A stretch of DNA of 63,982 nt, filler included, from Octopus bimaculoides (GCF_001194135.2; 6 parts of 5 records of this genome joined end to end with filler, not necessarily neighbours in it), one strand, 5' to 3'. Positions 87-24,285 are shown, numbered from the whole stretch's first letter. The notes: a model not told the origin generated them from the letters alone. Translations and numbers: made by a program.

Positions 87-359
87 TTACAGACTCTCTA
101 ACCAGTCTATCTCCCAATTTTGAGCTGCAATTTTACGCTCATTTCTTGCTTTGCTTTTTTCCGCACTGCGACGTAACTTTTCTGCTGGGATTTTTGATAT
201 AGAGAAAGGGGTTACAGCAACCCGGCTAAAGCGAGGGCAAGTGCTGCTGCTCCATACATTCAACTTCCTTCTCAGAGATGCAGAAATCTTGGTTTCTGTC
301 ATATTCTTGCTGATATACAATTCAACGTTGTCTATTTTGTTGTTGTAAATCATCAGAAT
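87..359 (-). CDS. Exon 21 (terminal coding exon)
   Basis: ttgttttgcag|[18 protein letters not shown]...[30 protein letters not shown]; 273 nt, phase 0; the 3' UTR runs off the window start. Confidence 0.8.
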   Translation of the reverse strand: MLMIYNNKIDNVELYISKNMTETKISASLRRKLNVWSSSTCPRFSRVAVTPFSISKIPAEKLRRSAEKSKARNERKIAAQNWEIDWLESL

Positions 360-1020
360 CTGCAAAACAAGATGACATTTTTCTGTAATTAACCATTTAG
401 CATTTAAACAGACCACATGATTCAGGGTTCAGTCCCACTGTGTGGAACCTTGAGCAACTATTTTTTTTTACTATAGCCTCAAGCTGACCAAAGTCTTGTG
501 AGAGGATTTGGTTGAGGGAAACTGAAAGAAGCCTGAGGCACCAGTACCCCACCCTTACTTCACTGCTTGCTTTATATTCAGCTTTGCACTGCACACATAT
601 ATATCTTATATATAAAATAAATCTCTGTGTGTGTGTTTGTTTTTCACATGAAAACGGCTGCCCGAATTGGTCCCATACTTGGGGTGCATGAAGAGTTTGA
701 CTTGGAATACAATAAAATGGTCTTGGTTTATTTTTTTTTTATCAAAAATAAATAATATTGCTTTATATAAGATTAACTTCTTTAAAAAAGTTTTTCAATG
801 TTAATTTCTGGTACTGACGTAGTAACTGCAGCTAGCTCGACATACACATGTATGTCTGATGTAGCAACTGTGGCTAGCTACACACACATGGATGTCTGAT
901 GTAGCAGCTGCAGCTAGCTACACACACACATGGATGTCTGATGTAGCAACTGTGGCTAGCTACACACACACATAGATGGATAGATAGCTAGCTAGCTAGC
1001 TAGCTAGATAGATAGATAGG

Positions 1021-1051
<31 letters not shown>

Positions 1052-2309
1052 GATGGATAGATATATAGAGATAGATTGGATAGATAGATAGATAGATAGA
1101 TAAAGAGGTAGACAGACAGATTAGATAGATAGATAGATAGATAGATAGGCAGGCTGAGAGGTAGATAGATATAGATAGATATAGATAAATAAATATAGCT
1201 AGAGAGATAGATAGATTTAGATTTAAATAAAAGCGGTTAAAATGTAAATACTCATCAACAGTGTATTGTACACATTCATGTGTGTATGTGTAGCTAGCAT
1301 CCAAAATTCCTACAAATATACTTTACGAGTGATTCTCAACAAGAAGGGCAAGAGAGGTACAAGAACATTTCTGGCATCAGGATGACCATTGTAGTGTTTC
1401 CGTAAAAGATGCTGCACAACAACAAGAACAGTAAAAAGCCTGATTAGAAACTTCAAGACTGCACTTGAAACAATTCTACCTGACTCCAGCAAATACAAGG
1501 GAGTAAGAAAAGAGTACTGTGTTAAGTAAGTCTGAGTTTATAATCTGAATGAAACTGGGTCCTTCTGCTTATATATATATATCTCAAGAGGTCAAGAGTT
1601 CAATTCCTGAAGCAGCCAGTCTGTTGTGTCCTTGGGCAAGACTTCATTTTACATTGCTCCAAAGCACTGAAGTAAAAACGAGCGGGGATGGTGGTGGCAG
1701 TGATGGTGGCATTGGTGTTGCTGATAGTGCTGAAGGTGGTGGTGGTGGTGGTTGTGCTGGTGGTGGAGGTGGTGGTGATGGTGGAGGTGGTGATGGTGGA
1801 GGTGGTGGTGATGGTGGAGGTGGTGGTGGTTGTGATGGTGGTAATGATGGTGGCGGCAATGATGATGACGACGACGACAACGATGAAGAGTTGAACAAAC
1901 AAACAGAAGTAGCCATTTACCTTGAGGACATTTCGAAGAACATCAACATCTTTGTCCGTCTCCAGAAACACGATGACTTTACCCGAGGCTCTCATTGCAA
2001 GTTCTTGCTCCAAGAGTTCCATCAGAGGGGAAGGATTGTCATCTCCACCAAAGAGCAGTTCCTTTACCGTTTCACTCTCTTTAACATTGTACTTGGAGTC
2101 AAGAAGAGGCTCTGAAACAACAAAACCACTGCAGTTCATTCTCCTACAACTGTATTGATCTGTCTGTCTGTCTATGTATCTATCTACCTTATCTACATAT
2201 TTATCTATCTGTCTGTCTGTCTGTCTGTCTGTTCAACCATCCATCTGTCCACCTGTCTGTCTGCCTATGTATGTATGTATGTATGTATGTATGTATGTAT
2301 GTATGCATG

Positions 2310-2343
<34 letters not shown>

Positions 2344-5284
2344 TGTACATATGTATCTGTCTATAGATAGACAGATAGATAGTTACATACATACATATAT
2401 ATACACACACACATGTGTGTATGTATCTATGCATATATTAGTGTATGTATGTGGCTGTGTGCATATGTATGTATATATGTATATGTGAGTCTATGGCTGT
2501 GTTGCCATTAGGTCTGAAAATCGAATGGAAGTCTCAAAAGAACCTAACTGCAGTTCTTGGTGATCCAAAGCAGATATGCAATTTATGTGGGTGTCTTTTC
2601 AAAACAATGTCTGGTTTTAAAAGTCACATCAGACGCCATGATAGATCTAAGGTGTAAGTACAAGAGATGGTCAGAATTCTGCATAAAGAGCAGACAACCA
2701 CCATGGCTCTGTGTGTGTGTGTGTACATTTGAAAGAGAAAGACAGAGAATGTGTGAGATAATGTTAGAGATAAAGAAAGTGGAAAGCCAAGGAAGGAAAC
2801 CAATTTTCCTTGAGGAATGAAACCAATTTTCCTCCCACACCAGTCTCCTCCCACTAACACCCAACCGAATATAGATGCCTCACTTACAGCCTTCCCTCCT
2901 TCCCCTCCCCTAGCATTCCTACCTTCCTCCTTTCCCCTTCTTCCTCCTCCTCTTCTTCTTCTCATTCCTCCTATGCCCTTCTCTTTCCTCCTCTTCTTCA
3001 TCATCCTTCTCCTTCCCAGTTACATTCACAAAGTGTCCTCTCGCACTCTCTCTCTCTCTTCTGTATCTCTCTCTCTCTATTCTGTATCTCTCTCTCTCTC
3101 TTCTATATCTCTCTCTCTCTCTCTCTCTTCTCTATTTCTCTCTCCCTCTCTATTCCCATCTTTCACTCTCCCTCTGCCTCCCTCCCTCTCTCTCTTTCTC
3201 TCTTTCCTGCGAGGTGCTGATATTTACCAATGACCGCATAGAGAGGGATTGTCTCAATACAGATGTTGCCTTGTTCACAGGCCAAATGGTGGACCATGCT
3301 GTTGGTATTTGTGCTGCTGTAGAATGCGACGGTGTTGTGTAAGTTGGGAAAAGGCTTGCTGGCCTTATTCATGAATGTCCGTAGGAGCTGACTGCAAGCT
3401 TGAGTCTTTTGCAACCACACTGTCCCTGTAAAGGAAAGTATATATAGATATGTGTGTGTGTGTGTGTGTGTATTTGAAATTTATAGAAAAACAAAAGACA
3501 AAGACGGGTGTATGAACAATAAGCAGGTGTATTAGTTTGACGCTCGGAAAAAATGAAAAAGTTTTTTACGTTTCGAGCCTATGCTCTTCAACAGAAAGGA
3601 ATAAGAGAAAATAAACAGAGAGAGAATGAAAAAACTTGTACAGTTCAGCAGTCCAACATGGCAAATGATATATATATACATATATATATCTATATATTGT
3701 CATCATCATCATCATCATTTAACTGAGGACTGGCGAGCCAGAAGGCTGCACCAGGATCCAATCTGATCGGGCAAAATTTCTACTGCTGGATGCCCTTCCT
3801 AACGCCAACCATTCCGAGAGTGTAGTGGGTGCTTTTACATGCCACTGGCACGATGGCCAGTCAGGCAGTACTGGCAACGACCATGCTCAAAAGGTGTATT
3901 TTATGTGCCACCTGCACGGGAGCCAGTCCGGCGGCACTGGCAATGACCACACTCAAATGTAAGCCAATGTTCTCTTGTCATTTATTTAATTTCATATTAT
4001 GCTCTGTACTCAAGTAATGCTTTATTCTGAAGTATATATATATATTGAGTTTTTCTCCATTGAGGGTTCTTATGACGCAAGTTATTTGGTGACCTCACTG
4101 GTGCTGGTGGTACATAAAAAGCACCCAGTACACTCTGTAAAGTGGTTGGTATTAGGAAGGGCATCCAATTGCAGAAACCCTGTCAAAGCAAACAGCAGAG
4201 CTTGGTGTAGTCTTATGACTTGCCTATTCCTGTCAAACCTTCCAACCCATGCCAGCATGGAAAAGGGACATTAAAGGATGATGATGATGATGACACAATA
4301 CAAAATGATGCAAGGAGCTACTTTGATTGAAAAGTCAAAATAATTCAAAAACCAAATTAAACTCTACCTGATCCAGAACAACCACCGCAATTGTCAACCA
4401 AACATTTTCTGGTGTCTACCATTATGTCACTTGTATCCATAGCACTGGCACCGGCAGCAGAGATCAGCCGTTCTATAAATGTTGAGGTTTCTTTTTCACG
4501 TTGAGCCTGTGTAGATTTACACACGTCTTGCTCTTTGACATTGTTGTTGGTGCAGAAACTGCCAGAGAAGGAAAGTCTAGGATTACTTTCAATAAAATGA
4601 AGTCACTTTGAAAATAGTTCATGAAACTGTATCAGTGAGACAAACCTGAGAGTTTTTAACACTTTCATCACATTTGGCAAACAATGACTTCTTTGATTAC
4701 AGGGCCCCATGGAACTGATCATTAGCTTACTGTATTGCCATGGTGATAGGGACCAGGTCGTTAAAGGGAAACACAAGCAGAATAAATATCATGAAAATCA
4801 TTTGTTGGAATGCTCCAGTTTATTGCTTAAATATACATACATACAAACAAAACACCTTGTTGATGTTGAAATTCCAATGAAGGAGCCTTGAATCTAGGTT
4901 AGAAACCAACTCTTTCTCCATTGACAAGAAATCTTGAAATAAAACTGAACAATGACACACATACATACATACATTCATATATACATACGTACAGTAGTGG
5001 TCAAATGTTTGGAACATTTTTTTAGAAATTGAAATTCTTATGCTAAAGTACAATTCGATTCAAATATATAACTTTAGGCATTCAATATAAAAATTGTAAT
5101 TTTCAGATCTTTGTTTCAAACTTTTGGCCACAACAGTGTGCTAGTAATGTTAAGCAGAAGCAACAGAGTGACTCAAAGGCTGAGAGTTTCATGTGTTAAG
5201 GGCCAGCATACAAAACACTTTTCTGTTAAATCAGTCTGTTGCTTCTGCTAAATATCAATAAAAATATGCAAATACTCGTATTTT

Positions 5285-5338
<54 letters not shown>

Positions 5339-5902
5339 CATACACACACATGCAAACATATATATATGATATATTATATACAATGTATTGTTTGCCTTTT
5401 TTTGGTAGGATTGACAAAAAAAGGTAAATCCAGCAAGTGATAAATATTATTTAATAAATTCAGTATCTACATTTGAGCTACTGCAAGTTTCATGTTAAGA
5501 TACAGCAGTAACAAGGCATGTTTGTATAGCATACTCATCATTGATTTATTCTCCTTTTCTCTTTTTTTCTCAGGGAGTAGCCATGTTTATTGAACCTGAC
5601 TGATTGAAACTATTTGAATGGTTTCTGCTCTTTTAAGCCAGCTGGTCTCATCTATCTTCAGCCAAACGTTCCTCTTCCAAAATACAGTGACTCTGTCCCC
5701 ACTACAACCACCACCACTGCCATCACACCAAACCATTAGAAAGCATCTTTGAAACAACAGAGAAAAACTTACTCAGTTCCTTCTGAGTAGAGAGAAAGGT
5801 AATAAAAATCTTCCCCCAGAATGGGTTTCTTGCAAGCTTCTTCCAGGTCAGTCGATGATATCAAAGAACCACCTGTGATACGAACAATGATAGTAATAGA
5901 GC

Positions 5903-5946
<44 letters not shown>

Positions 5947-8049
5947 TCACAGTGGGTGCATTAGTTATGATATAAAGAATATTCAAATACATAACAAAAA
6001 TACCAGGACTAACAAGTGTATATAACATACAGAAAATAGCACTACTAGGCACCACACACATCCTTCGTAAAACACTTTCAATACAGTGAAAATAAGGACA
6101 CCACAACAAACCACAGCACATACCCAAGGCACACAGAGCTGTGCTCGGTAGTGCAGTGAAAGCACGTAATAATGACTATTGAATAATAATAATAATAATA
6201 ATAATATATATAACATACAGAAAATTGCACTACTGGGCACTGCACACATCCTACGCAAAACACTTTCAATACAGTAACCATAAGAGCATTACAGCAAACC
6301 ACAGCACATACCCAAGGCGCACAGAGCTGCGCTCGGTAGTGAAGTGAAAGCACGTTATAAAAATAAAACTACTGAACAACAATAATAATAATAATAATAA
6401 TAATAATAATTCTTTCTTCTACTATAGGCACATGATCTGAAGTTTTGGGGGAGGGGTAAGTCAAATATCTAATGGAGGCCTCAAAAGACATTTTAAGATC
6501 CACAAAGATCAGAACTTAACTAAAGCTTCTTGGTGGTCCAAATCGGATATTCAATCTATATGGGTGCCTTTTCAATACATTGTCTGGATTTTAAAAAACC
6601 ACATCAGACGCCATGATGAATCTAAGGTGTAAATATAAGAGGTGGTCAGACTCTATATAAGGAGTAGACAACCACCATGTGTATGTATAATATTTTGTGT
6701 ATGTATAATATTTTGTGTATGTATAATATTTTGTGTATGTATAATATTTTGTGTATGTATAATATTTTGTGTATGCTGCCCTTTGAGACACTAATCCTTC
6801 ATTTGTCAACACGTGAACCTGTCTGTCTGCTTATTCTTCCTTCCCTCTCTAACATCCCCAACTATTCATTTGTTAACCTGACACAGAACAGTCTTACATA
6901 CCAACCTCAATTCCAATCCATACCTGTGTGCGCAGCATCAGAAAATTTCTTGAGCTGTCTAAAAGTTTCATTGTTTCCTCCAGCATTCCATATTTTTATG
7001 AAATGTTTTCCATTTTGTGGCCTCAGATCCACATAGATGGAGCTGCTGTGAAGTCCAATTCCGAGAGACCAATCAACTGCCCGTAACGACGGACTGCATT
7101 GTCGGATGACTGTTTCTGCCAGAAGTAAAAGATGGTTTGAATCTTTGTCTTTTGTTGTCAATTCAACTGCTTTTCCTGCCTGGAATCGGTGAAGTTCTTC
7201 AATATGGCGGTGATTTAGGTTGAGGAGATTGGCTGTTGATGAACGATAAGCACCATTAGGTGTGATGTGGAATTTCTCTGGGAAAGCTTCCTTAACTCTT
7301 TCTAAACATGTCAAAATCTGTGGATCAAGTCGGAAATAACGCACATTGGAAAAGAGAAAGTCTTTTATTTTGAAATTCGGAGAGAGGTTTGTCATCTTGT
7401 TTGACCCATCAAATAACATACTTGCCCCAGATTCTGACTGGAGAGGTCTTGGATAATCATATTCTTGTGACTGAGAAAATGGTGGTTGAACCACTAGTAA
7501 ACTCTGGCTGAGAAAATCCACCTCGTTTGCTACCCAGCCAGCTTGTTTCTTAACAAATACTTCAATGAATGAATGGCTACTATAGGAGACATAGTCAAAA
7601 CTGGCACATATGGCCAATAAAGAAAGTTGCTGGAGGTATAATCCCGGGTTTGCTGTTGTTGTGAGCCGTAATCCTCTACAATAAAGATAAAATGAAATAA
7701 TGAAAAGAACTATATTCATTATATTTTGGTAAAAATGGTTACTAACTATTTTTAACTCAATATATAATGTTGGGTGTCTGGAAGTTTTTCGTTTTTGTTT
7801 TGATGGAGGCTTGAGTGTGAGTGTTTGTAGATTCTAGGTTTAAACATGTTGCTGGTTAACAACATCATAAACAATACCTAAAAGGAAAATTGTAATTGCT
7901 TACCTGCCTTCTGTGTACAAGGGATGAAATTGGTCAGGTTTGGGCTTGTATTCCGAAGCTTCTTTATGACTCATTAGGACTTTAATAACTGCAGATAGAT
8001 ATAACATTACTTTATCAGGATGTAACTGCACACACACATATATAGACAT

Positions 8050-8083
<34 letters not shown>

Positions 8084-8275
8084 GGACTGGTGAGTGTATT
8101 TATAACTAAGGTGAAAATCAAAATCAATACATAAGAAAAAGGGTATAAATTTGAAGATATTTTATGAGAAGCTGAAGCTTCTTGAATCAGAACTGGGTTC
8201 GATGGTGTCTATTATTGAAGTATTTGAACAAATGGAAGCCTGATACTTAAAGCTTTGGATTCAAGGATGAAGATG

Positions 8276-8314
<39 letters not shown>

Positions 8315-11300
8315 GTTTCAAATTTTGCCACAATGGCAGCAATTTTGGGGGAGGAGATGAATTGATTACATCGACCCCCAGTGTTTCACTGGTCCTTAAT
8401 TTATCGACTCTGAGAGGATGAAAGGCAAAGTCGACCTCGGCAGAATTTTACCTTTCATCCTTTCAGGGTTAATGATGATAATACACACACACACACACAC
8501 ACACACATTTACAACAACAAGAAATGATTTTCCTACCTGTTTTTAGAGCTGGTTTCTTTGCTGGAAAGTAATTAAAAATAATAATTATTTTTTGATCAAA
8601 GGTAATATTGGTGATTAGGGATCATTGACTAGCGGTTAGGGACTTATGATAGAAGTTGGGGATTAAGTATTAGGGATTAGAGTTGAAGATTATGCATTAG
8701 TTATTAGCAAATGGAAGAAAAGATTTACAATTTTCATAATTACAAACAGCAAGCTAAGGGAAATAACCCAAGTCCTGTAAATTTAGAATCTTCCAGCATT
8801 CCATAAAATAGCACCAAATGGTGTTTGCCTCTTAATTGGAGAATGAAAACAAACACCCAATGGCAACTCAGAAAGGAAAAGAGAGAGATAATTTCAGGAA
8901 AATAAAAATTAATTACATAGAAAATAAAAATTTTTTATGCTTAGAAGAGAAATATGATGTCCATTAGCAAGCAAGGGTACAATGACTTTCGACCTGTTCC
9001 CATCTTATTTGCCCTCATCAAGGAGACAATGCCAGATATATTTTGATCTTATTGCACCACTTGTAATTTTAGTTTAATTGAAAATATTTTGCAGCTTACC
9101 TCCAACTCAACCATCTCTATAGTAACTGTACTTAGCTGTATAGTTTTTATGGCAGAAGGTACCCACAGACTATATGTGTGCACACACATGTGGGTATGTG
9201 TATACATCATCATCAACATTATCATCATCACCATTTAATGTCTGCTTTCCATGCTGGCATGGGTTGGATGCATCAAGCTGCAATTGTCTGTTTTGACCTG
9301 GTTTCTATGGCTGGGTACCTTTCCTAATGTCCCCCATTTTGCAGAGCGCATTGGGTGCTCTGTATGTAGGCACAGCATTAGTAAGGTGACCAAGGAACTT
9401 ACAAGACGTGAAACCCTCAACTCTGTGGGGGTGGGGGGTTGTGTTTGGGGAGGTGACTTTGAGCCAGGTGATGAGAAGTTAAAGCATGATAAAGGGACAG
9501 AAACAGGTGTCTTGCTGTAGAAGAGATACATAGCTACCCCAGTTGGAAAAAGAGAGAGAAAATAGTTAAGAGGTGTTAGAGTATATTTGTACAGAACTTG
9601 AACTGTAAAAGAATTTTTTTTCTTTATCTTCTGTCATCTGGAAATTGCCATAATCCTTACCTGTTCTAAAATTATCACCTCCTCTAGAAATAGTCAGCAT
9701 CATTTTTATGTTATCAAAAATTGGCAAGGTTGTTTTACTCATATCATAGAATGCTTCTCCTTTCAGTGACGCCACCATTTCAATTCACCAATTTCATCTT
9801 GTAATAACTCACCTTGCAGCCAAATGTTCATTAAACGAGATAACTCTCGCAGACGACTTGCCAGACGTCGACTCATAACACGTCTATTGCACCATTCCCA
9901 AGGTTCATCTGTTGCACTTGCTCGACTGCAATCGTCTCTGCAACATCTTAGAGTGTTTCCACACCAATTCTTTGACGGTCCCTCTGACTCAAACTCGATA
10001 TCGTTAAAAGGGTACACGTATAAACTGTAAAAACACAACATAAAATAAAGAGATATAATAGGACCAGCGACAAGCTGGTGCTCCAGATTGACCACAGTCT
10101 AATGTTTGAAACTTGCAAAAGGTAAAAAAAAAAAAAAAAGGACGACGTCCACTGTTTTANNNNNNNNNNGACGACGTCCACTGTTTTAAATCAGAAGTGA
10201 CACACATTTATAATGTAGTCTAAGGTTTATCATGCCAGGGAAAAAGACAAGATGGCCAGACTTGTATGAAAAAGCAAACATTAACCTTTTTGGTACCAAT
10301 CCAAATGAGACTGCCCCTAGTCTAAGGTAGAACCACAAAGATTCCCATTAAAATGTTATATTAGTCTAAGTTTTAAACACCAGATTAATAATGAGAAAAT
10401 GGTTTTACTAAATTCTTGATTCATTTTAAGAATTAATTGAAACATAACAGTGTATTTCTGCAGAAATATGATAGCAAAAGGATTAAACTGATTAACGAAC
10501 AATACAGATCGTTAAATCCAAAATGATAAAAACAAAACGATTATCTTTGTTTTTCACAAAATAAATTTACTTCAAATTTTCTTCTCAACACTTGATTTTT
10601 TAAAATTATAATTACAAAAAATATGGTCATGTGGTAAGAAGTTTGTTTCTCAACCACATGGCTCTGGGTTCAGTCCCACTGTGTAGTACCTTGGGCAAGT
10701 GTCTTCTATTATAGTCACAGGCCAAACAAAGCCTTCGGAGTGGATTTGGTAGATGGAAACTAAAAGGAGTCCGTCGTATATATATGTCTTTGTGCTTTAC
10801 CCCTGTCACCACTGACAACAGGTGTTGGTTTGTTTATTTCTTTGGCAAAAACAGACCGACAGGGAAAATACTAAATTTGGGTCGGCAAAAATTGACTCTA
10901 ATTTCGTAATCTTTGTTCTTAACGCTCAAACTAGAGCAAGTAATGCAGGGGAGATAACTCCAGAAATGCAGTTTATTTAACCCCCCTCCATTCCCCACTA
11001 TTGCACCCTGTTATCATTAAATTCTCCTTTATCTTTTACTTCAGTCGTTAAACTGCGGCCATGGACATCTGCTTCGAAACCGCCAGCTACTATATCCAGA
11101 CTATGAATTCATATTCATACCAACAATAATCGGAGCACTAGGTTTTGTTAGTAAATGCTTAAAGGAGAATCTGGATAAACTGGGGTTTTCAGAAAGAGAA
11201 ATTGACCAAATAGTTCATACATTACAAGTGCAATCTGTGAGTGGAACAGTAAAAATATGCAAGACTTTTCTCAAGTTCCAAATGTGAATTTGTCTATGTT

Positions 11301-14300
11301 AACTACATCCCAAAGATGGAGCCTTGTTGGATACTGGTTCCCACCTCAGTGGAAGATTTCTAATAATTAAAAAATAGAAGAGACATACATACATACATAT
11401 AAACAGGCTTGGATAACCTTAACAAATGATTTAATAGCACTGTTAACACAGTAGAACACAGTATTGACGAATAAAAGTGTTTAATATACTTTGTTTTATA
11501 TTAGGGCTGCATAACAAAATACGGTCTCCCTACAAGCCATCAATGAAATATCTCATAGCTTTTAGAGATTGATGATTGTTATTCTTAGAATGACATTGTA
11601 AGATAGGTGTGAGAGGTCTGATCTGGCCAGTTCAAATATAAAACAGGAAAAATATTTTAGCTGGATGTGGCTGGTTTCGGTGCTAAAAAGTTAAGCTCTA
11701 ATCTACACTGAGCCCTTTTTGGTGCCACACGTTTACAAGGATTCTGTGAAGTTTCATGTTTTACAATTTCTCGCAGGGATTACTCACCTGGAATAGTCTT
11801 TGGTGTTGGTTCGGTCATTTGCAACATCAACAGGGCCACACACTTCATCTGCTGTCATATTTTCTGGGAATGTGAATCCAACACGGAACGGCTTGTTCAA
11901 CAGGTCATCACACATACTGATATCAGAGCCTGCAATACAAGGCAATTACAAAGTATATTCAAGATAATTTATATCATCATCATCATAATCATCATGTGGT
12001 GGTCAATGGTAAATATCAGTATGGGGCAGGGGAGAGTGAAAGAGAGAGAGAGAGAGAGAGGAGTGTCTCAGGGAGGGGTGGGGGTTATAAGTGGCATTTA
12101 CAGGAAAGCTAAAATTAACTGTAACGTTGATAACGCTTATAGGTGAGAGGATTATTTTGATGGTCTGAAACTCAAAACAGGTTTTTTCAATGAAATATCT
12201 TACTTGTGGCATTCATTGAAGTCATAAACATTTTCTTGTCCGATATTTCCTCCTCAGTCTCTGAACTGGAATCAGATTTTTCTGGGGGTTCCTCCATACA
12301 AACGGCCAGTTCTAAGTAAGCATCAGTTTTCACTTGTCGGACATATTGGAAGTCGGCACAGAGGGCGAGTTTTCCCAACACATCGAGTGTGGTGGGGCTT
12401 TTATCCAGCGACAACCCCTTGTTTGGATTGTTAGCATCAATGGGTTTACTTATTCCAATCTGTATTGCTCTGGCTTCACCATAGAACAAAGAATCCTTTT
12501 TATTATTTGGTAACTGAGGGGGATTTGCTGGTGGAGCTTCAGTCCAGGATTTCAGAACAATCAGCTTTCCTGCAAAAGACAAAATATTGTCATACATACA
12601 TACATACATATATATATATACACGAGTGAGATCGAAGGATTTTCGAGCGAGATTGAAGGATTTTCAAGCAAGATCGTTGCCAGTGCCCCTGGACTGGCTC
12701 TTGTGCAGGTGGCACATAAAATACACCATTTTGAGCGTGGCCGTTGCCAGTACCGCCTGACTGGCCTTTGTGCGGGTGACACATAAAAGCACCCACTACA
12801 CTCTCTGAGTGGTTAGCGTTAGGAAGGGCATCCAGCTGTAGAAACTCTGCCAAGTCAGATTGGAGCCTGGTGTAGCCATCTGGCTTCACCAGTCCTCAGT
12901 CAAATCGTCCAATCCATGCTAGCATGGAAAGCGGACGTTAAACGATGAACGGCAGAGGCACACACACACACATAGATACATATATATACAAGGTGCCTTC
13001 CAGAAGTTTGAAGATGATTTTTTAGGAGAGGCAGTTTTAACCATCCTAGATTATTGTATTTTTAGTCTCTCATTACTTTATATCATATCTAATAAGCTGA
13101 CCTGCCAACTTTTGATATTCTAGATGGAAGGAGATGGCTGTAGTAGCCCTCCAGATACACCCTGCTAAACTTTGCTTGTCATGGCTGACTAGTTTTGCAG
13201 CTCGCTAGTTTAGCAGCTTGCTGCCTTTACATTATTTCTGTTTACCAAATTCCATTACCAAGATATTGGTCAACGAAGGGTCTAGAAGCAGACATTTGCC
13301 CAAGGAATCATTTATGCGGACCAATTAAAACAAACATAAAAATAAGAGAAAAAAATATACTTATTGGTCTTACTGTTTGGCCAGGTAAGCCTGGACATGA
13401 GGACAAGTTTTGAGAGTTGCAAAGCCAATCTTGGTGTCACCATTCTATCAGGACATTGGTTTGTCTTGGAATTCTTCACTGAATGTTTGAAACAATCCTG
13501 ACACTTTCTTCCTTGTTGTTGGCACCAAGTTCCATTTGTTAGTTCTGACATGAAGACAATGTCATCTCCAAGAAGGTAAAGCAGACTGAAAATAAATAAG
13601 AACAAAGCAGTATGGGTAGTGATGCTGTTGTTGTTGTTGTTGTTGTTTAGGATCATAATTTCAGCTTAGGCATTGTGTACATTATCCAATGTAAGTTGAA
13701 TTGGCTACATTATCCAATGTGAGTTTAATTAATTAGGCATCATGTACCTTAGGCTATATTATGCAATGCATGTTTAATGAATTAAAGGTGACATATTTGG
13801 GGTTATAATAAGAGACAATTAGGAGTTATAATGAAGGTAATAAAGGGATATTAAAGGGGTATTGGGATTATAATAAGATGTTATTGGGGGTTATAATAAA
13901 GAGATATAAGGGGTTATTAAATGTTATAATAAGAGGCTATTAAAGATTGTAATAAAGGGGTACCAGGGGTTACAATAAGGGGGCATTTTTTTGTCTTTGA
14001 TCAGTAATTGTTGTTTCCTATTTGCTTCTATCTAGAAATCAAAGGAAATGTCTACCATTCCCTTCAAAGTTTGCTTTTGTAACCTGGACATCAATGTCTC
14101 GAAACTGATCCATTTTCCATTTCAGACAGATTCAGTGCTGAGTTGCTGAAGTATAAATATTGCTATAGCAAATATTCTGACCAGTACCACGGATTTGCTT
14201 GTCAGTTGCTTGACCACAACTACTTGAGCATGTCCCTTAGTGGCTGACGATATGTGCATCTCTGACCATGAACAGGCGTAGTGGTGGGGGGCATCATAGC

Positions 14301-15024
14301 CATGTGTTTAGAGAGATTCTTTAAAGTTTGAATGAATGTAACAAAGCAGAGTTTGAAGGAAATATTAGCCATTTTTCATACTTTCTAGGGGTCAGCAAAT
14401 AGGAAATAACAGTTGCTACCCAAGGACAAAATTTGTGTTATACAGGGTCATAACAAATCTGAGACAGAAAAGAGAATGAGAAATAATGAAGAATGGTATT
14501 TACTTTTTTAAATTACTTTTCTTGTTGGTATTTCTGCTATAGGTGGCAGCACATATATCTGTCATCTTCAATGATTGGTCAGTTTCAGTTTTACCATTGT
14601 GATGACATTCTGCTGTTTCCAAATGTAACAACATTTGTTCACCGATTGTCACTTCTTGAGATTCTATTTTTTGTTGTTCTCTGCAACAACAAAATATAAA
14701 ATATAACACCAAATATATACGTGCACCATGGAGGTGTGTGTGTATATACATGTTACTTACATGTTAGTTTCTGTAGAGTTATCGTCGTGTTGCGGAGTAA
14801 CCAATGTGGTTAATACTGATGCAGAAAGCTTTGATGTGATCTTTGTGGAGCGAACCGGCCCAGCGGCTTTAGATTCTACTTCAACATTAGGGTTAGAACT
14901 GTGGAAAAGAAAAGAAGGTTCTGTTAGCCATTCCTTGCAGGAAATGCCTTATATGCATAAAAATGCACAATAACACACACACAGAGATACACACACACAC
15001 ACACATATACATGCATATGATGGA

Positions 15025-15095
<71 letters not shown>

Positions 15096-15715
15096 TTAGG
15101 GAAAATAACCAATTTTCAAGAACTCATCGATGAAAATCCACTATCACATATAGAAAAATTAATAATTAAAAGCACAATAAATGAGTATAATATAAAGTAA
15201 AGTAAATATCATAAGATAAATATAATAAAAAGATTACACGTGTTTCATAACCAATTTTCAAATAGAAAAGAAATTTAAATCGATTAAAATCAATTGAAAT
15301 TATCGAAAATAAATTCTATTCAAAAATATAGCTACTCGTCAGATCGCAAGTATATATATATATATATATACATACATACACATATATATTACATATGAAT
15401 ATGTATATACACACACACACACACACACACATGCACACTCACATACATTTCTTGGAGTGATGACCCAAGAAATATAAAGATTTGTTGCAGATATTTACCT
15501 GATCTCTACCGGAAAGGTGTGAAGTGGGTACATCTTATCCATGAACAGACCAAGGTGAGCTGTGAATTTCAACTGGAAGTAACAAGCGAAAAATAACTTG
15601 TACACACACATATATATATATATGCACACATATATACATATGAGTGTGTGTGTTTGTGTGAGAGTGTACATGTGCGTCTGTGTATGTATGCATATATATA
15701 TATATATATATATAT

Positions 15716-15758
<43 letters not shown>

Positions 15759-17105
15759 TACATATATATATGTACGAGGGGGAAAAGAAAAGTTCTTGGT
15801 TTTGGATAAAAGAAAATACAGGATGATCAGTTAATTATCATTTTATTCAACATATTCCCTTCTCAGATTCACACGCTTATTGCAGCAATTCTTCAGTTTT
15901 TCTAAGCCTTGTAAAAGATCTCAGAAGGTTAGGCCTCCAACCAGGCCTTTTGTGATATCCTTAAAGCCAAAACCTTTTCAGTACCCTTATGTGTATATAT
16001 ACATATACATGTATGTATGTATGTATGTATGTATGTATGTATGTATATGTAGCTATGTCTGCATATATGTACACACACACACAGATATACTAACCTGATG
16101 TGAGAACTGCATTAGCATCTTCATGTCCTGTTGTGCATCAGCCTGTACACGAGTTTCGTTACTTAATTGCCAATCGGTAACTTTCACATCTTGTGTACTT
16201 CTGTTACCCTTCTCGTACTCCATCACTGCCATTAAAACAATCAGAAACTTAGAATAATTATTTCAGTTTTGTATTTAATTTTCAAGATTCTTGATCTGAA
16301 TTCATGTGTTGAAACAGATTTTGTTGTGTCTTGGGAGGGTCATCACGCTAATAATAATAAATACGCACACTGGTTCAATTTCACTTCTTTTAAAATTATT
16401 TGTCAATTGGTTAATCATTTAATCAATTAACTAATAGATTGTTCAATTAATCGCTTAGCTGATCAATTAATCAGTTGTGTTTATCAAAGGCCTTTTGCCA
16501 TAATCATAACTTCTTCAATGTCTTTCCCCTCTATTCTAGATCTACTTTTGTCAATGAAGACGTCATGAGGTTTTGACTGACACAACTGATTAATCAATAA
16601 ACTGAATGATTAATCAAACAATTTATTAGTTGCTTAAATAATTAGCCAATTGACTAATAATAATAAAGAAATGAATTTGAATCAGTGCATGTGTTATTGT
16701 TGGCATAATGATTGTCCGAAGATGCAACAAGATATTGGCTTCAAATTTTTGGTGCAAGGCCAATGAGTTCAGGGGAGGGACTAAGATGATTACATCGACC
16801 CCAGTACGCAACTGGTACTTATTTTATTGACCCCAAAAGGATGAATGACAAAGTCGACCTCAGCAGAATTTGAACTCACTCTGACTTACAGAATCTTGTC
16901 AAACTATCCAACCCATGCCAGCAGGGAAGATAGACACTAAAAGAGGGTAATGATGGTGATGATGACGATGACGATGATGACATGGCAATGATGGTAAATA
17001 ATAATAATGAGGATTTCAAATTTTTGCCACAAGGGTAGCTTGAGGGAGGGGATTAAGTTGATTACATCGACCTCAGTGCATAACTGGTACTTATTTATTC
17101 AACCC

Positions 17106-17151
<46 letters not shown>

Positions 17152-18800
17152 GTCCTGCTGCAATGACAGGCAGTGGCTCTCATGCTTCTGATCTTAACTA
17201 ATTGGAAGTGCTATGGCGTACATGCTTTGTCTTGGCATAAAAGATGGGCTACAGCAAATATTCTGCTCAATACCACAGATTTGCTTGTCGCCTGCATGAT
17301 TTTAACTAGTTGGGTATGTCCCTTCGTGGTTGATGATATGTTCATCTCTGATAACAAGCAGAAGTAGTGGAGGAGAATCATACCTATGTGTTGAGAGGAA
17401 TTCTTTGGGGTTTGAATAATTCACCCCAGGAAAGATGTGTTTTGTTCACCCTCGTTAAACAAACCTTATTCAGGGACCTTTTGAGTCGGATGGGCTACTC
17501 AACCTCCCCACCCCAAAATTGTAACTGGGCCTCACCTGCATGGTCATGTGCAGTTTATCTTGATATGTGGTCACCATGTCGTGCATACGTGGTTATGATG
17601 CATCTGCCTTGTGCACCCTTATCAGACGGGTAGTCAACATGGGTATATCGAGCTCCATATATTTGTACCCGTGTCACTTTGATGCTCTCTCACTCAATAA
17701 CAACCACAACAACAATAAACATGATGAATATATGTCCCCCACCCCACCCACCCCTTACCTGTTGTGTAATCTGCCATAGAGTTTACCACTGTAGTCACAT
17801 GACTTCTTCCAGGAGCAGCGAAAACATTGAAGTTGAGACTTGATTCTANNNNNNNNNNNNNNNNNNNNNNNNNNNNNNNNNNNNNNNNNNNNNNNNNNNN
17901 NNNNNNNNNNNNNNNNNNNNNNNNNNNNNNNNNNNNNNNNNCTTCACAGCAGTCTTGTTAAATATCTCTGTATTTAATTCCAGCAATGACTTCAAACTGA
18001 CATTCACCTGAGAAAATGGTTTTAAAAATCAAAAGAAATATTAACCATTTAGCATTCCGATTATTTCATTTAAATTTAATCTTTATTATTCACATTATTT
18101 TGGATTAATCATGTATTATCTTGTGGCTTTCAGATTTCAATCATGTGACTGTCTGTGTTTAAGATTATAAATGTTGGGTAGGTGTGAGAGGCTGGATCTG
18201 GCCAGTTTGAACATAAAACAGGAAGAATATTTGGGTGAGTCATGGCTAGATTGGAAACCAATTATGATTTGATGGTTAGAGTGGTAAGAGGCAGAGTCAA
18301 TGGTTAGATGGCTGTGGAGTCCAGTTATACCACGTGGAGCTGTGTGAGGTTGTTTGGTTAAGTACCTTGTGTTTTCTGATTTCATATTGAGTAGCACTTA
18401 CCTGATTATAAAAGGATTTGACACAACTTATTCCTTCCGGGTCTTTGGCAATGACCAGCTCCCTACAAAGAAATTATACTTACAAAGACGTATGTAGACT
18501 CATGCATACACATACATACAGTGGTGGACTGGGTCTAAAAATATTGGTTGCCAGGAGACTAAGGGGGCCCACCAGCAACTACAATGCTTTAATTTAATTT
18601 TTTTTGTTAAAAGTATTCTTTCCAACTGTCTACAAACACAGCCAGGCTGAAACAATTAATCCATTCTTCCAGGAGTGAATAAAAAATCCTCAAACTTGAG
18701 GGGATGGGCCCCTTAGATACTAATATGGATTCTAAAGATGCAGGGGCCTGCTTGCCATTGGGCAAGCTGGCAACCTGGCAACCTGGCCAGTCTGCCACTG

Positions 18801-18832
<32 letters not shown>

Positions 18833-20121
18833 CATACCCACATACATACATGCACACATGCCTACATATGTTAACTACTGGAATATGTAATACACAGCCT
18901 AAATGCCAATCTTGAGAAAGAAACCGGCTCTTTCTTTATTGGCAAGAAATCTTGAAATAGACTGAATAATGACATACATACATACACACATACATACATA
19001 CACACACTTGAGCAGTTGTAATGCATCTAAGCACTGTATACAAAGAACTCGTTATTATTATAAATAATTTTTAAATACAAGCAGAGAAAATTGCAAAGAG
19101 AGACGGTTGCCCCACCAACTTACATATCAAAAGATATATTGGATCTTGTTTCGCAGTTTGAAACCTTGACTGATAGATCCATACTTGCTCCAGAAATGTT
19201 GCTGTTGTTGTAGTCGTCATCAAGAATCTTAACTAAATCATCACTGTCCTTCAATTTGATCAGGTGGAATGGTCTGGTTGAAAATCGGTTGAGGAAAGTT
19301 ACCACATTTTGTGATGTGACAGAAGTGTTTTGGTGAGTTGTTGGTTGAATGGAAGCTGACTGTTTGGTGTTGGATGGTCTCAAATGGATGGAGAAGGTGG
19401 TGGTGTTTTCAAACAGACCCAAGGAACTTATTAAAAATAGTGCAAAGATTGAATTTATTGGAAAAATATATAAATAAATAAATAAATATATATATATATA
19501 TAAATAGAAATATTTATTTCTTTATTGCCCACAAGGGGCTAAACATAGAGGGGACAAACAAGGACAGATAAAGGGATTAAGTCGATTACATCAACCTCAG
19601 TGCATAACTGGTACTTATTTAATCAACCCCGAAAGGATGAAAGTCGACCTCAGTGGAATTTGAACTCAGAACGTAGCAGCAGACGAAATACTTGCTGCCT
19701 TAATAAATAGAAATACTAAATAGATAAGTGATTGTGTGCCACTTATATATATTTTCAAACAGATGTTTAGCAGCGCCACCTTAGCTGAACAGTTATTCTG
19801 TGCAGAGGAGGGGAAATAACCCAGAAACTACAGTGGCCTGCAGATATTGCTTTGTACTGATTGGGGATGCTGAACTCCCCTGTTTGAAAATATAAGGACA
19901 CAGATATTGTGTCTTATGGCCAGCTGGAGACGATGTTTACTGGAGTTAAACAATAGTAGCATTCGTCCCAACCAAGACTGCCATATTATGATGACAAATA
20001 GTCTTTACTTTAAATATATCATCATCATCATCATCATCGTTTAACGTCCGCTTTCCATGCTAGCATGGGTTGGACGATTTGACTGAGGACTGGTGAAACC
20101 GGATGGCTACACCAGGCTCTA

Positions 20122-20169
<48 letters not shown>

Positions 20170-22529: not shown

Positions 22530-22983
22530 NNNNNNNNNNNNNNNNNNNNNNNNNNNNNNNNNNNNNNNNNNNNNNNNNNNNNNNNNNNNNNNNNNNNNNN
22601 NNNNNNNNNNNNNNNNNNNNNNNNNNNNNNNNNNNNNNNNNNNNNNNNNNNNNNNNNNNNNNNNNNNNNNNNNNNNNNNNNNNNNNNNNNNNNNNNNNNN
22701 NNNNNNNNNNNNNNNNNNNNNNNNNNNNNNNNNNNNNNNNNNNNNNNNNNNNNNNNNNNNNNNNNNNNNNNNNNNNNNNNNNNNNNNNNNNNNNNNNNNN
22801 NNNNNNNNNNNNNNNNNNNNNNNNNNNNNNNNNNNNNNNNNNNNNNNNNNNNNNNNNNNNNNNNNNNNNNNNNNNNNNNNNNNNNNNNNNNNNNNNNNNN
22901 NNNNNNNNNNNNNNNNNNNNNNNNNNNNNNNNNNNNNNNNNNNNNNNNNNNNNNNNNNNNNNNNNNNNNNNNNNNNNNNNNNN

Positions 22984-23345
22984 CAATACCAGCAGATGAC
23001 AACGTTTCCCTAAAAGAAATGGAAAAACTTTCAAAATACAAAGACCTGGAAATAGAGGCAACTCGAATGTGGAATCTAAAAACAGAAACAATTCCTATTA
23101 TAGTAGGTGCCTTAGGTATAATAAAAAAATATTCAGACAAATACATAACAAAAACACCAGGACTTAAAAATATATATAACATACAGAAAATTGCACTACT
23201 GGGCACTGCACACATCCTACGCAAAACACTTTCAATACAGTAACCATAAGAGCACCACAGCAAACCACAGCACATACCCAAGGGGCGCAGAGCTGTGCTC
23301 GGTCGTGAAGTGAAAGCACGATATAAAAATAAAACTACTGAACAA
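22984..23345 (+). mobile_element. R4/Dong-like RLE non-LTR 3' end
   Basis: IPADDNVSLKEMEKLSKYKDLEIEATRMWNLKTETIPIIVGALG...[14 protein letters not shown] (RLE C-terminus), 3' UTR, then (TAA)n. Confidence 0.8.
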
Positions 23346-23368
23346 TAATAATAATAATAATAATAATA

Positions 23369-23400
<32 letters not shown>

Positions 23401-24131: not shown

Positions 24132-24285
24132 CAGGTATGGCTGTGAGGTAAGAAGCTTGCTTTCCAACCACATGGTTCCAGATTCAGTCCCACTGTGTGG
24201 CATCTCAGGCAAGTGTATTCTACTATAGCCACAGGTCAACCAAAGCCTTATGAGTGGATTTGGTAGATGGAAACCGAAAGAAGCC
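24132..24285 (+). mobile_element. SINE family A
   Basis: ggctgtgaggtaagaagcttgctttccaaccacatggttcc...gaaagaagcc. Confidence 0.7.

What the first reader, a model, noticed from the sequence alone, without database searches (positions are those of the whole stretch)
7018..12480. All canonical Zn ligands are replaced in every module: a triple pseudo-peptidase
Shh-N binds Zn through SLH-YEGRAVD and HIH; M15A peptidases use H-x6-D and a distal H (SxHxxGxAxD...HVD). Here module A has [11 protein letters not shown]...YLE, module B has PLYTEGRGLR...FIE, and the M15A-like domain has [10 protein letters not shown]...IYVD. Both Hedge modules place Glu at the third-ligand His and Cys in LA(L/I)CA(D/S)F. 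This shared pattern suggests a selected non-catalytic surface rather than random decay. Inference: the protein binds rather than cleaves, and it probably lacks the Zn-dependent HHIP/PTCH interaction mode of Hh.
Basis: partly seen in the sequence, partly recalled or inferred. Interest (0 to 1): 0.7.

Follow-up and report, generated by a model that had tools for sequence, protein, structure and literature searches.

The report
Octopus protein with three dead peptidase-like domains
The window holds one large octopus gene for a secreted protein with three hedgehog/peptidase-like domains in a row that have all lost their zinc-binding residues, followed by a CD38-like domain; it belongs to an old, unstudied family found from choanoflagellates to molluscs and starfish.

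Summary
On the minus strand, all nine zinc-ligand positions (His/Asp/His in three modules) hold other residues: F/Q/E in module A, Y/R/E in B and F/E/Y in C. The catalytic Glu is also lost in A and B.

Modules A and B are clear Hedge domains (profile vs Shh-N, E 2e-15 and 7e-14). Module C belongs to an M15A-like branch whose protist and metagenome relatives still carry SxHxxGxAxD...HxD.

The assembly gap at 10160-10169 is intronic and harmless.

The finding covers only part of the gene. The gene is Octopus bimaculoides LOC106872581, about 1390 aa, and runs from 21986 to 87. It encodes a signal peptide, a beta-rich N-terminal region, Hedge A, Hedge B, module C and a roughly 310-aa C-terminal domain. 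An AlphaFold model of that last domain matches only CD38/ADP-ribosyl cyclase in Foldseek, at fold level with no sequence signal.

Orthologues exist across molluscs. A related cassette (C-like, Hedge, C-like, CD38-like) occurs in starfish, sponge and choanoflagellate proteins. No Hedge domain in the family has a full zinc triad.

The substitutions in B (R+E) and C (F/E/Y) are conserved; those in A drift.

Best reading: non-catalytic binding modules in a secreted protein. The ligand is unknown.

The parts
87..21986 (-). Coding span of Octopus bimaculoides LOC106872581. The 1390-aa model is XP_014775101.1; the newer model XP_014775101.2 starts inside it. There are at least 22 exons.
   Evidence: Exhaustive HMMER search gave a 100% identical hit, P0001. 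tblastn and the exact spliced map are.
12289..14574 (-). Module A (residues 453-640), a Hedge domain with a Cys-rich insert. Exons: part of 14680-14504, 13585-13374 and 12569-12204.
   Evidence: Pfam HH_signal. Profile vs Shh-N E 1.8e-15. hhalign A vs B E 4.7e-33.
7537..12231 (-). Module B (residues 660-869), a second Hedge domain. Exons: end of 12569-12204, 11929-11788, 10024-9813, the 24-nt micro-exon 8560-8537, 7988-7904 and the start of 7675-6924.
   Evidence: Pfam HH_signal E 8e-8. Profile vs Shh-N E 7.3e-14. Exon map.
6976..7419 (-). Module C (residues 909-1056), an M15A-like/Hedge-like domain lying within exon 7675-6924.
   Evidence: Exhaustive search and jackhmmer alignment with relatives that keep the canonical motif. 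HH_signal 21.7 bits against a cut-off of 22.1. Dhh in the PDB at E 0.006.
12484..12486 (-). Module A, His140 position: Phe575.
12460..12462 (-). Module A, Asp147 position: Gln583.
12310..12312 (-). Module A, His182 position: Glu633. The Glu176 position is Val626, at 12331-12333.
7915..7917 (-). Module B, His140 position: Tyr819.
7666..7668 (-). Module B, Asp147 position: Arg826.
7561..7563 (-). Module B, His182 position: Glu861. The Glu176 position is Ser855, at 7579-7581.
7183..7185 (-). Module C, first His position: Phe987.
7162..7164 (-). Module C, Asp position: Glu994.
7033..7035 (-). Module C, last His position: Tyr1037.
10160..10169 (.). Assembly gap (10 N) inside the intron 11787-10025, flanked by a 19-nt duplicate. 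It has no effect on coding.
90..5870 (-). C-terminal domain (residues 1075-1390) with a CD38/ADP-ribosyl-cyclase-like fold. Exons: 5872-5773, 4558-4368, 3425-3228, 2111-1921 and 359-87. A conserved dibasic site, KLRR|S, lies at 179-165.
   Evidence: AlphaFold2 pLDDT 83, pTM 0.85. The top 50 Foldseek PDB hits are all CD38 or Aplysia cyclase. Conservation.
14575..21986 (-). Signal peptide and beta-rich N-terminal region (residues 1-452). One exon is interrupted by the N gap at 17849-17941.

Best explanation
The region is the middle of one intact, conserved gene, Octopus bimaculoides LOC106872581. The gene encodes a secreted, Cys-rich glycoprotein of about 1390 aa.

Its order of parts is: signal peptide, a beta-rich N-terminal region, Hedge module A, Hedge module B, an M15A-like module C, a C-terminal domain with a CD38/ADP-ribosyl-cyclase-like fold, and a conserved dibasic (furin-type) site about 25 residues before the C-terminus.

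The three middle modules descend from zinc DD-peptidase-type domains but cannot work as such. Every zinc ligand is replaced, and in A and B the general-base Glu is replaced too.

I infer that they act as non-catalytic recognition or scaffold modules, with the old active-site cleft kept as a binding groove. In module B the former metal site would be filled by an Arg826-Glu861 pair. In module C it would be filled by a conserved Phe/Glu/Tyr set. The modules would position or target the C-terminal domain.

Shown here: the gene structure, the domain homologies, the substitutions and their conservation pattern, the fold match of the C-terminal domain, and the phyletic spread.

Inferred only: loss of metal binding and catalysis, ligand binding (the ligand is unknown; candidates are a peptide stem such as that of peptidoglycan, or an extracellular-matrix component), the Arg-Glu pairing, secretion and cleavage.
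For: Gene and reading frame:
- An exhaustive HMMER search found a 100% identical RefSeq protein.
- The window reproduces it exactly across GT-AG introns.

Hedge identity of A and B:
-.

Ligand mapping:
-.

This is not decay of a dead gene:
- Full-length orthologues of 1327-1490 aa occur in cephalopods, gastropods and bivalves.
- Identity between octopus and Argonauta is 51% for module A, 61% for B, 71% for C and 57% for the C-terminal domain.

Conserved substitutes:
- Module B has R/K at the Asp position in 7 of 9 orthologues and E/D at the third His in at least 7 of 9.
- Module C has an aromatic residue at His1 and Tyr at His3 in all molluscan orthologues. F-E-Y is the commonest triad in 94 domain copies, against 7 canonical H-D-H.

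No conserved replacement set of His/Asp/Glu appears in any module.

Secreted nature:
- The only hydrophobic stretch is N-terminal. There are 33 Cys and 17 N-glycosylation sequons.

C-terminal fold:
-.

Family-wide linkage of these domains in starfish, sponge and choanoflagellate proteins:
-.

Precedent for Hedge domains without the zinc motif:
- Drosophila Hh and Hedgling (PMC6027127, read).
Against: - No coordinates were available, so the geometry of the former metal sites, the Arg-Glu pairing and the disulfide pattern were not checked.
- Glu, Tyr and Cys can bind metals. Octopus module C also has a nearby His985, although it is not conserved.
- Module A's substitutions are not conserved, so its groove may be functionless.
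- The CD38 match is at fold level only: TM 0.43-0.58, rmsd about 6 A, 11-14% identity.
- There is no sequence support for it, and the Cys pattern differs from that of the cyclases.
- No expression, protein or binding data exist.
Confidence: 0.62

Rival explanations
1. The modules are only structural spacers. The old cleft has no ligand, and the protein's activity sits entirely in the N- and C-terminal domains.
For: Module A's ligand-equivalent positions vary freely among orthologues. Only Cys, Arg, Gly and hydrophobic core positions are invariant.
Against: Module C is the best conserved part of the protein: 71% identity between octopus and Argonauta. Its substituted triad F/E/Y is itself conserved. 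Module B keeps a charge-complementary R/E pair. The cassette of these domains has been kept since before animals.
Confidence: 0.17
2. One or more modules are still hydrolases, using a different metal or a rebuilt site. Examples would be Glu/Tyr/Asp in module C, or Glu/Cys in modules A and B.
For: Asp to Glu in module C is conservative, and the Asp of the HxD motif is retained as IYVD. Octopus also has His985 two residues upstream.
Against: His985 is not conserved. The general-base Glu is Val in module A and Ser in module B. No alternative His/Asp/Glu column is invariant. Seven relatives do keep the full canonical motif, so the canonical solution was available to the lineage.
Confidence: 0.08
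3. The protein, or fragments released from it, is a hedgehog-type signal acting through Patched.
For: There are two clear Hedge domains. Drosophila Hh signals without the zinc motif (PMC6027127). Conserved dibasic sites could release fragments.
Against: There is no Hog/Hint domain and no GCF autoprocessing site. There is no N-terminal CGPG palmitoylation peptide at either module. The calcium-site residues are mostly replaced in octopus. Each module carries a Cys-rich insert that Hh lacks.
Confidence: 0.06
4. The triple module is an annotation or assembly artefact, or a decaying pseudogene.
For: There are two N gaps in the gene region, and RefSeq changed the model between versions.
Against: All exons from residue 275 on are in frame with GT-AG introns. 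The same domain order occurs in at least eight other mollusc genomes. The gap inside the finding is intronic.
Confidence: 0.02

Closest known systems
Hedgehog N-terminal signalling domain (Hedge; Pfam PF01085; the 'Hh/DD-peptidase' group of Roelink 2018)
   Same: Modules A and B align over about 100-120 residues of Shh-N, including the WP..L.V.E.W, SL.YEGRA and LA..AGFD.V motifs. Module C aligns more weakly.
   Different: There is no zinc triad and no catalytic Glu. Most calcium ligands are replaced in octopus. There is no palmitoylation peptide, no Hog/Hint domain and no cholesterol-type autoprocessing. There are three copies inside a 1390-aa protein, and A and B carry a Cys-rich insert of 25 to 26 residues.
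Drosophila Hedgehog and Hedgling N-domains (Hedge domains that have lost the zinc motif)
   Same: They show the same kind of loss. Drosophila Hh has H-x6-T, H-x-Y and Glu177 to Val (PMC6027127). Octopus module A also has Val at the Glu position, and module C has Tyr at the last His.
   Different: Those domains are single and N-terminal, in a signalling protein (Hh) or a cadherin-type adhesion protein (Hedgling). Here all three ligands are lost in each of three tandem internal modules, and the partner domains are different.
Peptidase family M15, subfamily A type domains (SxHxxGxAxD...HxD; Pfam PF08291 and relatives)
   Same: Module C shares the LS.NF..(D/E)F, CL(E/Q), (S/A)YR, G.A, G(I/L)G and (V/I)D.R motifs with relatives that keep the full zinc motif.
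   Different: Octopus has Phe, Glu and Tyr at the three ligand positions. No Pfam M15 model scores significantly on it. It has two invariant Cys.
CD38 / BST1 / Aplysia ADP-ribosyl cyclase (Pfam PF02267)
   Same: The predicted fold of the C-terminal domain matches over about 265-280 aligned columns. All of the top 50 PDB hits belong to this family.
   Different: There is no detectable sequence similarity. The Cys pattern differs. The equivalents of the catalytic Glu and Trp residues could not be identified. The family's invariant polar residues are Lys, Asn and Arg.
Non-catalytic peptidoglycan-recognition proteins (PGRPs derived from zinc amidases)
   Same: Analogy only, from general knowledge. 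A zinc hydrolase fold that acts on cell-wall peptides lost a metal ligand and was kept as a binding module in secreted animal proteins.
   Different: The fold is unrelated. No binding data exist for the octopus protein.

Membership tests
Hedgehog N-terminal domain (PF01085) | Sequence match above Pfam's gathering score | tested here: met
   Module A scores 23.8 bits and module B 32.6 bits against a cut-off of 22.1. The whole protein scores 53.9 bits. Module C alone scores 21.7 bits, just under the cut-off.
Hedgehog N-terminal domain (PF01085) | Zinc triad H-x6-D ... H-x-H (Shh His140, Asp147, His182) | tested here: not met
   F/Q/E in module A and Y/R/E in module B. No Hedge domain of the whole family has the full triad.
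Hedgehog N-terminal domain (PF01085) | General-base Glu (Shh Glu176, Glu177 in mouse) | tested here: not met
   Val626 in module A and Ser855 in module B.
Hedgehog proteins (true Hh) | C-terminal Hog/Hint autoprocessing domain with a GCF site, and an N-terminal CGPG lipidation peptide | tested here: not met
   No Hint family appears in the Pfam scan of the full proteins. The sequences around the modules lack these motifs.
Hedgling | N-terminal Hedge domain followed by VWA, cadherin and EGF domains and a membrane anchor | tested here: not met
   The Hedge modules are internal. No VWA or cadherin hits were found. There is no transmembrane stretch.
Peptidase M15A-type zinc peptidase | SxHxxGxAxD and a distal H(x)D/HxH forming the zinc site | tested here: not met
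   Module C has [10 protein letters not shown]...IYVD. Seven relatives in the same alignment meet the feature.
Peptidase M15A-type zinc peptidase | Peptidase activity or metal content | not testable with these tools
   This needs recombinant protein, ICP-MS and substrate assays.
ADP-ribosyl cyclase / CD38 (PF02267) | Two-lobed CD38 fold | tested here: met
   The AF2 model has pLDDT 83. Foldseek gives E 2e-5 to 8e-4, probability 1.0 and target-normalised TM 0.47-0.58 (TMt at or above 0.50 for all but three hits). All top 50 hits are from this family.
ADP-ribosyl cyclase / CD38 (PF02267) | Sequence match to the family | tested here: not met
   There is no Pfam hit and no PDB sequence or profile hit. 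hhalign against the Aplysia cyclase gives probability below 1%.
ADP-ribosyl cyclase / CD38 (PF02267) | Catalytic Glu (Aplysia Glu179) and the TLEDTL Glu/Trp set | tested here: inconclusive
   A C-x-E-(N/D)-T-x-(L/I/V)-(Y/F) motif resembles TLEDTL by eye, but its Glu is not invariant across the family. No structural alignment output was available.

The most novel reading that the evidence does not exclude
The octopus gene is one member of an undescribed holozoan protein family built on a conserved cassette. In starfish, sponge and choanoflagellate proteins the cassette is M15A-like, Hedge, M15A-like, CD38-like. In molluscs it is Hedge, Hedge, M15A-like, CD38-like.

If real, this cassette is an ancient eukaryotic home of the Hedge domain, independent of Hedgehog and Hedgling. 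It may couple recognition of a peptide or glycan ligand by dead peptidase domains to an NAD-using or nucleotide-binding CD38-like domain.

That would bear directly on where the Hedge domain of Hedgehog came from: an inherited eukaryotic lineage, as opposed to late transfer from bacteria.
Probability: 0.25. Interest if true: 0.85.

Novelty: new variant of a known kind. Interest (0 to 1): 0.6.

Why it matters
Hedge domains without a zinc site are already known from Drosophila Hh and Hedgling, so the loss itself is not new.

Three things are new as far as the searched literature shows:

- Three tandem dead modules sit in one secreted protein.
- They are linked throughout the family to a domain with a CD38-like fold.
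- The same cassette occurs in choanoflagellate, sponge, echinoderm, brachiopod and mollusc proteins, next to protist and metagenome relatives that still have the canonical zinc motif.

This gives a natural series from active-looking to dead domains for asking what the Hedge/M15A cleft does when it no longer cleaves. It also adds a third Hedge-bearing protein family to the debate on the origin of Hedgehog.

For genome annotation, these 'uncharacterized proteins' can now be given a domain description.

Tried and rejected
1. I first read the ATG at 13656 with a hydrophobic stretch as the start and signal peptide. This was wrong. The exon starts at an acceptor at 13585, and the gene begins at 21986.

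2. The word-indexed protein search with a concatenated exon translation found nothing.

3. The pairwise HMMER register that keeps a His in module C ('ELH' = 'SLH') was rejected. That His is not conserved, and canonical relatives fix the register two residues downstream.

4. NCBIfam gave no hit on exon 7675-6924, the exon that carries module C. The module C profile found only weak M15C hits in the PDB.

5. Sequence-level tests of the CD38 link all failed, so I claim fold similarity only. My by-eye match of C-x-E-N-T to TLEDTL is not supported statistically.

6. The N-terminal domain model (Argonauta orthologue, pLDDT 61.6) has long beta-hairpins, but Foldseek gave no significant match. The pore-forming proteins in that hit list have E above 0.05 and TM below 0.2, and I do not rely on them.

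7. Rusticalin, an ascidian M15C-type domain (PMC6339383), was considered and set aside as a different subfamily.

8. Searches for the locus names in the literature found nothing.
Full report
**What is in the window.**
The sequence is AT-rich, full of microsatellites and dispersed repeats, and clearly eukaryotic.

An exhaustive HMMER search with the largest exon (window 7674-6910) found a 100% identical protein, P0001. Cluster look-up names it XP_014775101.2, 'uncharacterized protein LOC106872581' of Octopus bimaculoides. An older 1390-aa model, XP_014775101.1 (P0072), sits in the same cluster.

tblastn and an exact splice-aware mapping place the coding sequence on the minus strand from 21986 (ATG) to 87 (TAA). 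From residue 275 to the stop, 17 exons with GT-AG introns reproduce the protein exactly.

**The assembly gap.**
The Ns at 10160-10169 lie in the intron between exons 11929-11788 and 10024-9813, 135 nt upstream of the acceptor. The same 19 bases stand on both sides. This looks like an unmerged contig overlap. No reading frame crosses the gap, so continuity across it does not matter for the finding.

**Check of the observation.**
- [11 protein letters not shown] at 12492-12460
- AYLE at 12321-12310
- LALCADF at 12369-12349
- PLYTEGRGLR at 7923-7666, spliced across the intron 7903-7676
- SFIE at 7572-7561
- LAICASF at 7617-7597
- [10 protein letters not shown] at 7191-7162
- IYVD at 7038-7027

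Orthologue profiles of modules A and B hit Shh-N in the PDB with E 1.8e-15 and 7.3e-14. The printed alignments put Phe/Tyr on His140, Gln/Arg on Asp147 and Glu on His182. They put Val (A) and Ser (B) on the catalytic Glu176. A and B are close paralogues (hhalign E 4.7e-33).

For module C two registers were possible. A pairwise alignment to Desert hedgehog kept a His ('ELH' on 'SLH'). That His is Q, L, F, W or I in orthologues. Relatives that still have SRHLSGTAAD...IHID fix the register so that octopus Phe987, Glu994 and Tyr1037 stand at the three ligand positions. hhalign of C against B agrees.

All nine ligand positions are substituted.

**Is it decay or a maintained state?**
The gene is conserved. 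Proteins of 1327-1490 aa with the same domain order occur in Argonauta, Haliotis, Batillaria, Sinanodonta, Pecten and Saccostrea; a 1197-aa Solemya protein also aligns.

Identity between octopus and Argonauta by region:

| Region | Identity |
|---|---|
| Module A | 51% |
| Module B | 61% |
| Module C | 71% |
| C-terminal domain | 57% |
| N-terminal region | 48% |

At the ligand positions the three modules behave differently.
- In module A they drift: F/H/Y, then Q/Y/T/K/R, then E/H/Q/S/D. Haliotis and Sinanodonta still have the first His, and Sinanodonta also has the last.
- In module B the Asp position is Arg or Lys in seven of nine orthologues, and the last His is Glu or Asp in at least seven of nine. 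Because Asp147 and His182 touch the same zinc in Shh, an Arg-Glu pair there could fill the old metal site. This is an inference and was not measured.
- In module C the first position is always Phe or Tyr and the last is always Tyr.

Over 94 copies of this domain type in the retrieved proteins, F-E-Y is the commonest triad (16 copies) and the canonical H-D-H occurs seven times.

No other His, Asp or Glu column is invariant in any module. The invariant columns are Cys, Arg, Gly and core hydrophobic residues.

**The rest of the protein.**
The only hydrophobic stretch is at the N-terminus, which fits a signal peptide. There are 33 Cys and 17 N-glycosylation sequons.

The first ~450 residues have no Pfam match. 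They were modelled on the complete Argonauta orthologue, because the octopus sequence has a gap there. The model is all-beta with very long hairpins but of only moderate confidence (pLDDT 61.6). It has no significant structural neighbour.

The last ~315 residues are well conserved, with ten conserved Cys, a [11 protein letters not shown] motif and NP.P. They have no Pfam or PDB sequence match. They gave a confident AlphaFold2 model (pLDDT 83, pTM 0.85).

Foldseek against the PDB returned only CD38 and Aplysia ADP-ribosyl cyclase among the top 50 hits. These had E 2e-5 to 8e-4, probability 1.0, target-normalised TM 0.47-0.58 and about 265-280 aligned columns.

Sequence-level tests of this link failed. 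The Aplysia sequence used for them was verified against 1LBE. I therefore claim a CD38-like fold only. I make no claim about activity.

A dibasic site (KLRR|S in octopus; RRRR|S, MKR|S and HRR|S in others) followed by a conserved NWE.(D/E)W helix lies near the C-terminus.

**The wider family.**
Domain profiles searched against all retrieved proteins show a recurring cassette: module-C-like, Hedge, module-C-like, CD38-like. It occurs in:
- ~900-970-aa proteins of starfish (Asterias) and bivalves
- a 2253-aa Oscarella (sponge) protein that also has trypsin and PLAT domains
- a 2145-aa choanoflagellate protein that also has C2 and Peptidase_M15_4 domains
- unnamed metagenome proteins

A Salpingoeca protein has the C-like and CD38-like domains only. 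A Lingula (brachiopod) fragment has the Hedge and C-like domains.

No Hedge domain of this family carries the full zinc triad. Short unnamed metagenome proteins keep the canonical M15A motif in the C-type domain, and a foraminiferan protein keeps both His.

**Comparison with what is known.**
Loss of the zinc motif in a Hedge domain is known from Drosophila Hh (H-x6-T, H-x-Y, Glu177 to Val) and from Hedgling (PMC6027127). The octopus protein is neither. It has no Hog/Hint domain, no lipidation peptide, and no VWA or cadherin domains.

I found no paper on this family or on a Hedge-CD38 combination. Databases call its members 'uncharacterized' or 'Hedgehog N-terminal signalling domain-containing protein'.

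**Verdict.**
The finding is real and its core reading, three dead peptidase-type modules, is well supported at the sequence level. The mechanism remains an inference: binding modules in a secreted protein that also carries a CD38-like domain.

Two things give the finding its interest. One is the architecture. The other is the age of the family, which offers a third Hedge-bearing lineage besides Hedgehog and Hedgling.

Noticed in passing
window 17849-17941 (N gap) with flanks 18007-17942 and 17843-17759, minus strand: This second assembly gap interrupts a coding exon of the same gene. The octopus model lacks about 37 residues that Argonauta and other molluscs have here, including a conserved IP....LPP motif. 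RefSeq's newer annotation splits the gene at this point into LOC128250892 (288 aa) and LOC106872581 (1094 aa).
   Followed up: partly
window 8560-8537, minus strand: A 24-nt micro-exon (AKKPALKT) lies inside a loop of Hedge module B. It is supported only by the gene model and by a similar KKKPATNKPA stretch in Argonauta. Other molluscs have no such insert.
   Followed up: partly
window 179-165 (KLRRS) and 119-90 ([10 protein letters not shown]), minus strand: A dibasic furin-type site is followed by a conserved amphipathic C-terminal helix. Both are kept from molluscs to starfish-type relatives. This suggests a cleaved C-terminal peptide or propeptide.
   Followed up: partly
window 13527-13453 and 9966-9889, minus strand: Modules A and B each carry a Cys-rich insert (WC...C..C......C) at the place of the short 'TGA' loop of Shh. 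Hedgehog proteins lack it. Its role and disulfide pattern are unknown.
   Followed up: no
window 5945-6410 vs 23096-23376; 3717-3946 vs 12905-12674; 10622-10769 vs 24136-24283 vs 412-534: The introns and flanks hold several families of dispersed repeats at 75-95% identity, including a tandem pair at 6019-6399. They are probably SINE-like or other mobile elements of the octopus genome.
   Followed up: no
Argonauta P0002 residues 223-485, equivalent to octopus exons between about 19124 and 14504: The predicted N-terminal region consists of about nine beta-strands of roughly 20 residues each, arranged as long hairpins. There was no significant structural match. The weak, non-significant Foldseek list was dominated by pore-forming proteins in their pore state.
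   Followed up: partly
window 22530-22983 (N gap): A 454-N gap lies about 550 nt upstream of the start codon at 21986, so the promoter and 5' region of the gene is incomplete in this assembly.
   Followed up: no
proteins P0038 (Oscarella) and P0047 (choanoflagellate): In these relatives the same cassette is fused to other domains: trypsin plus PLAT in the sponge, and C2 plus a Peptidase_M15_4 domain in the choanoflagellate. This hints that the cassette is a portable unit.
   Followed up: partly
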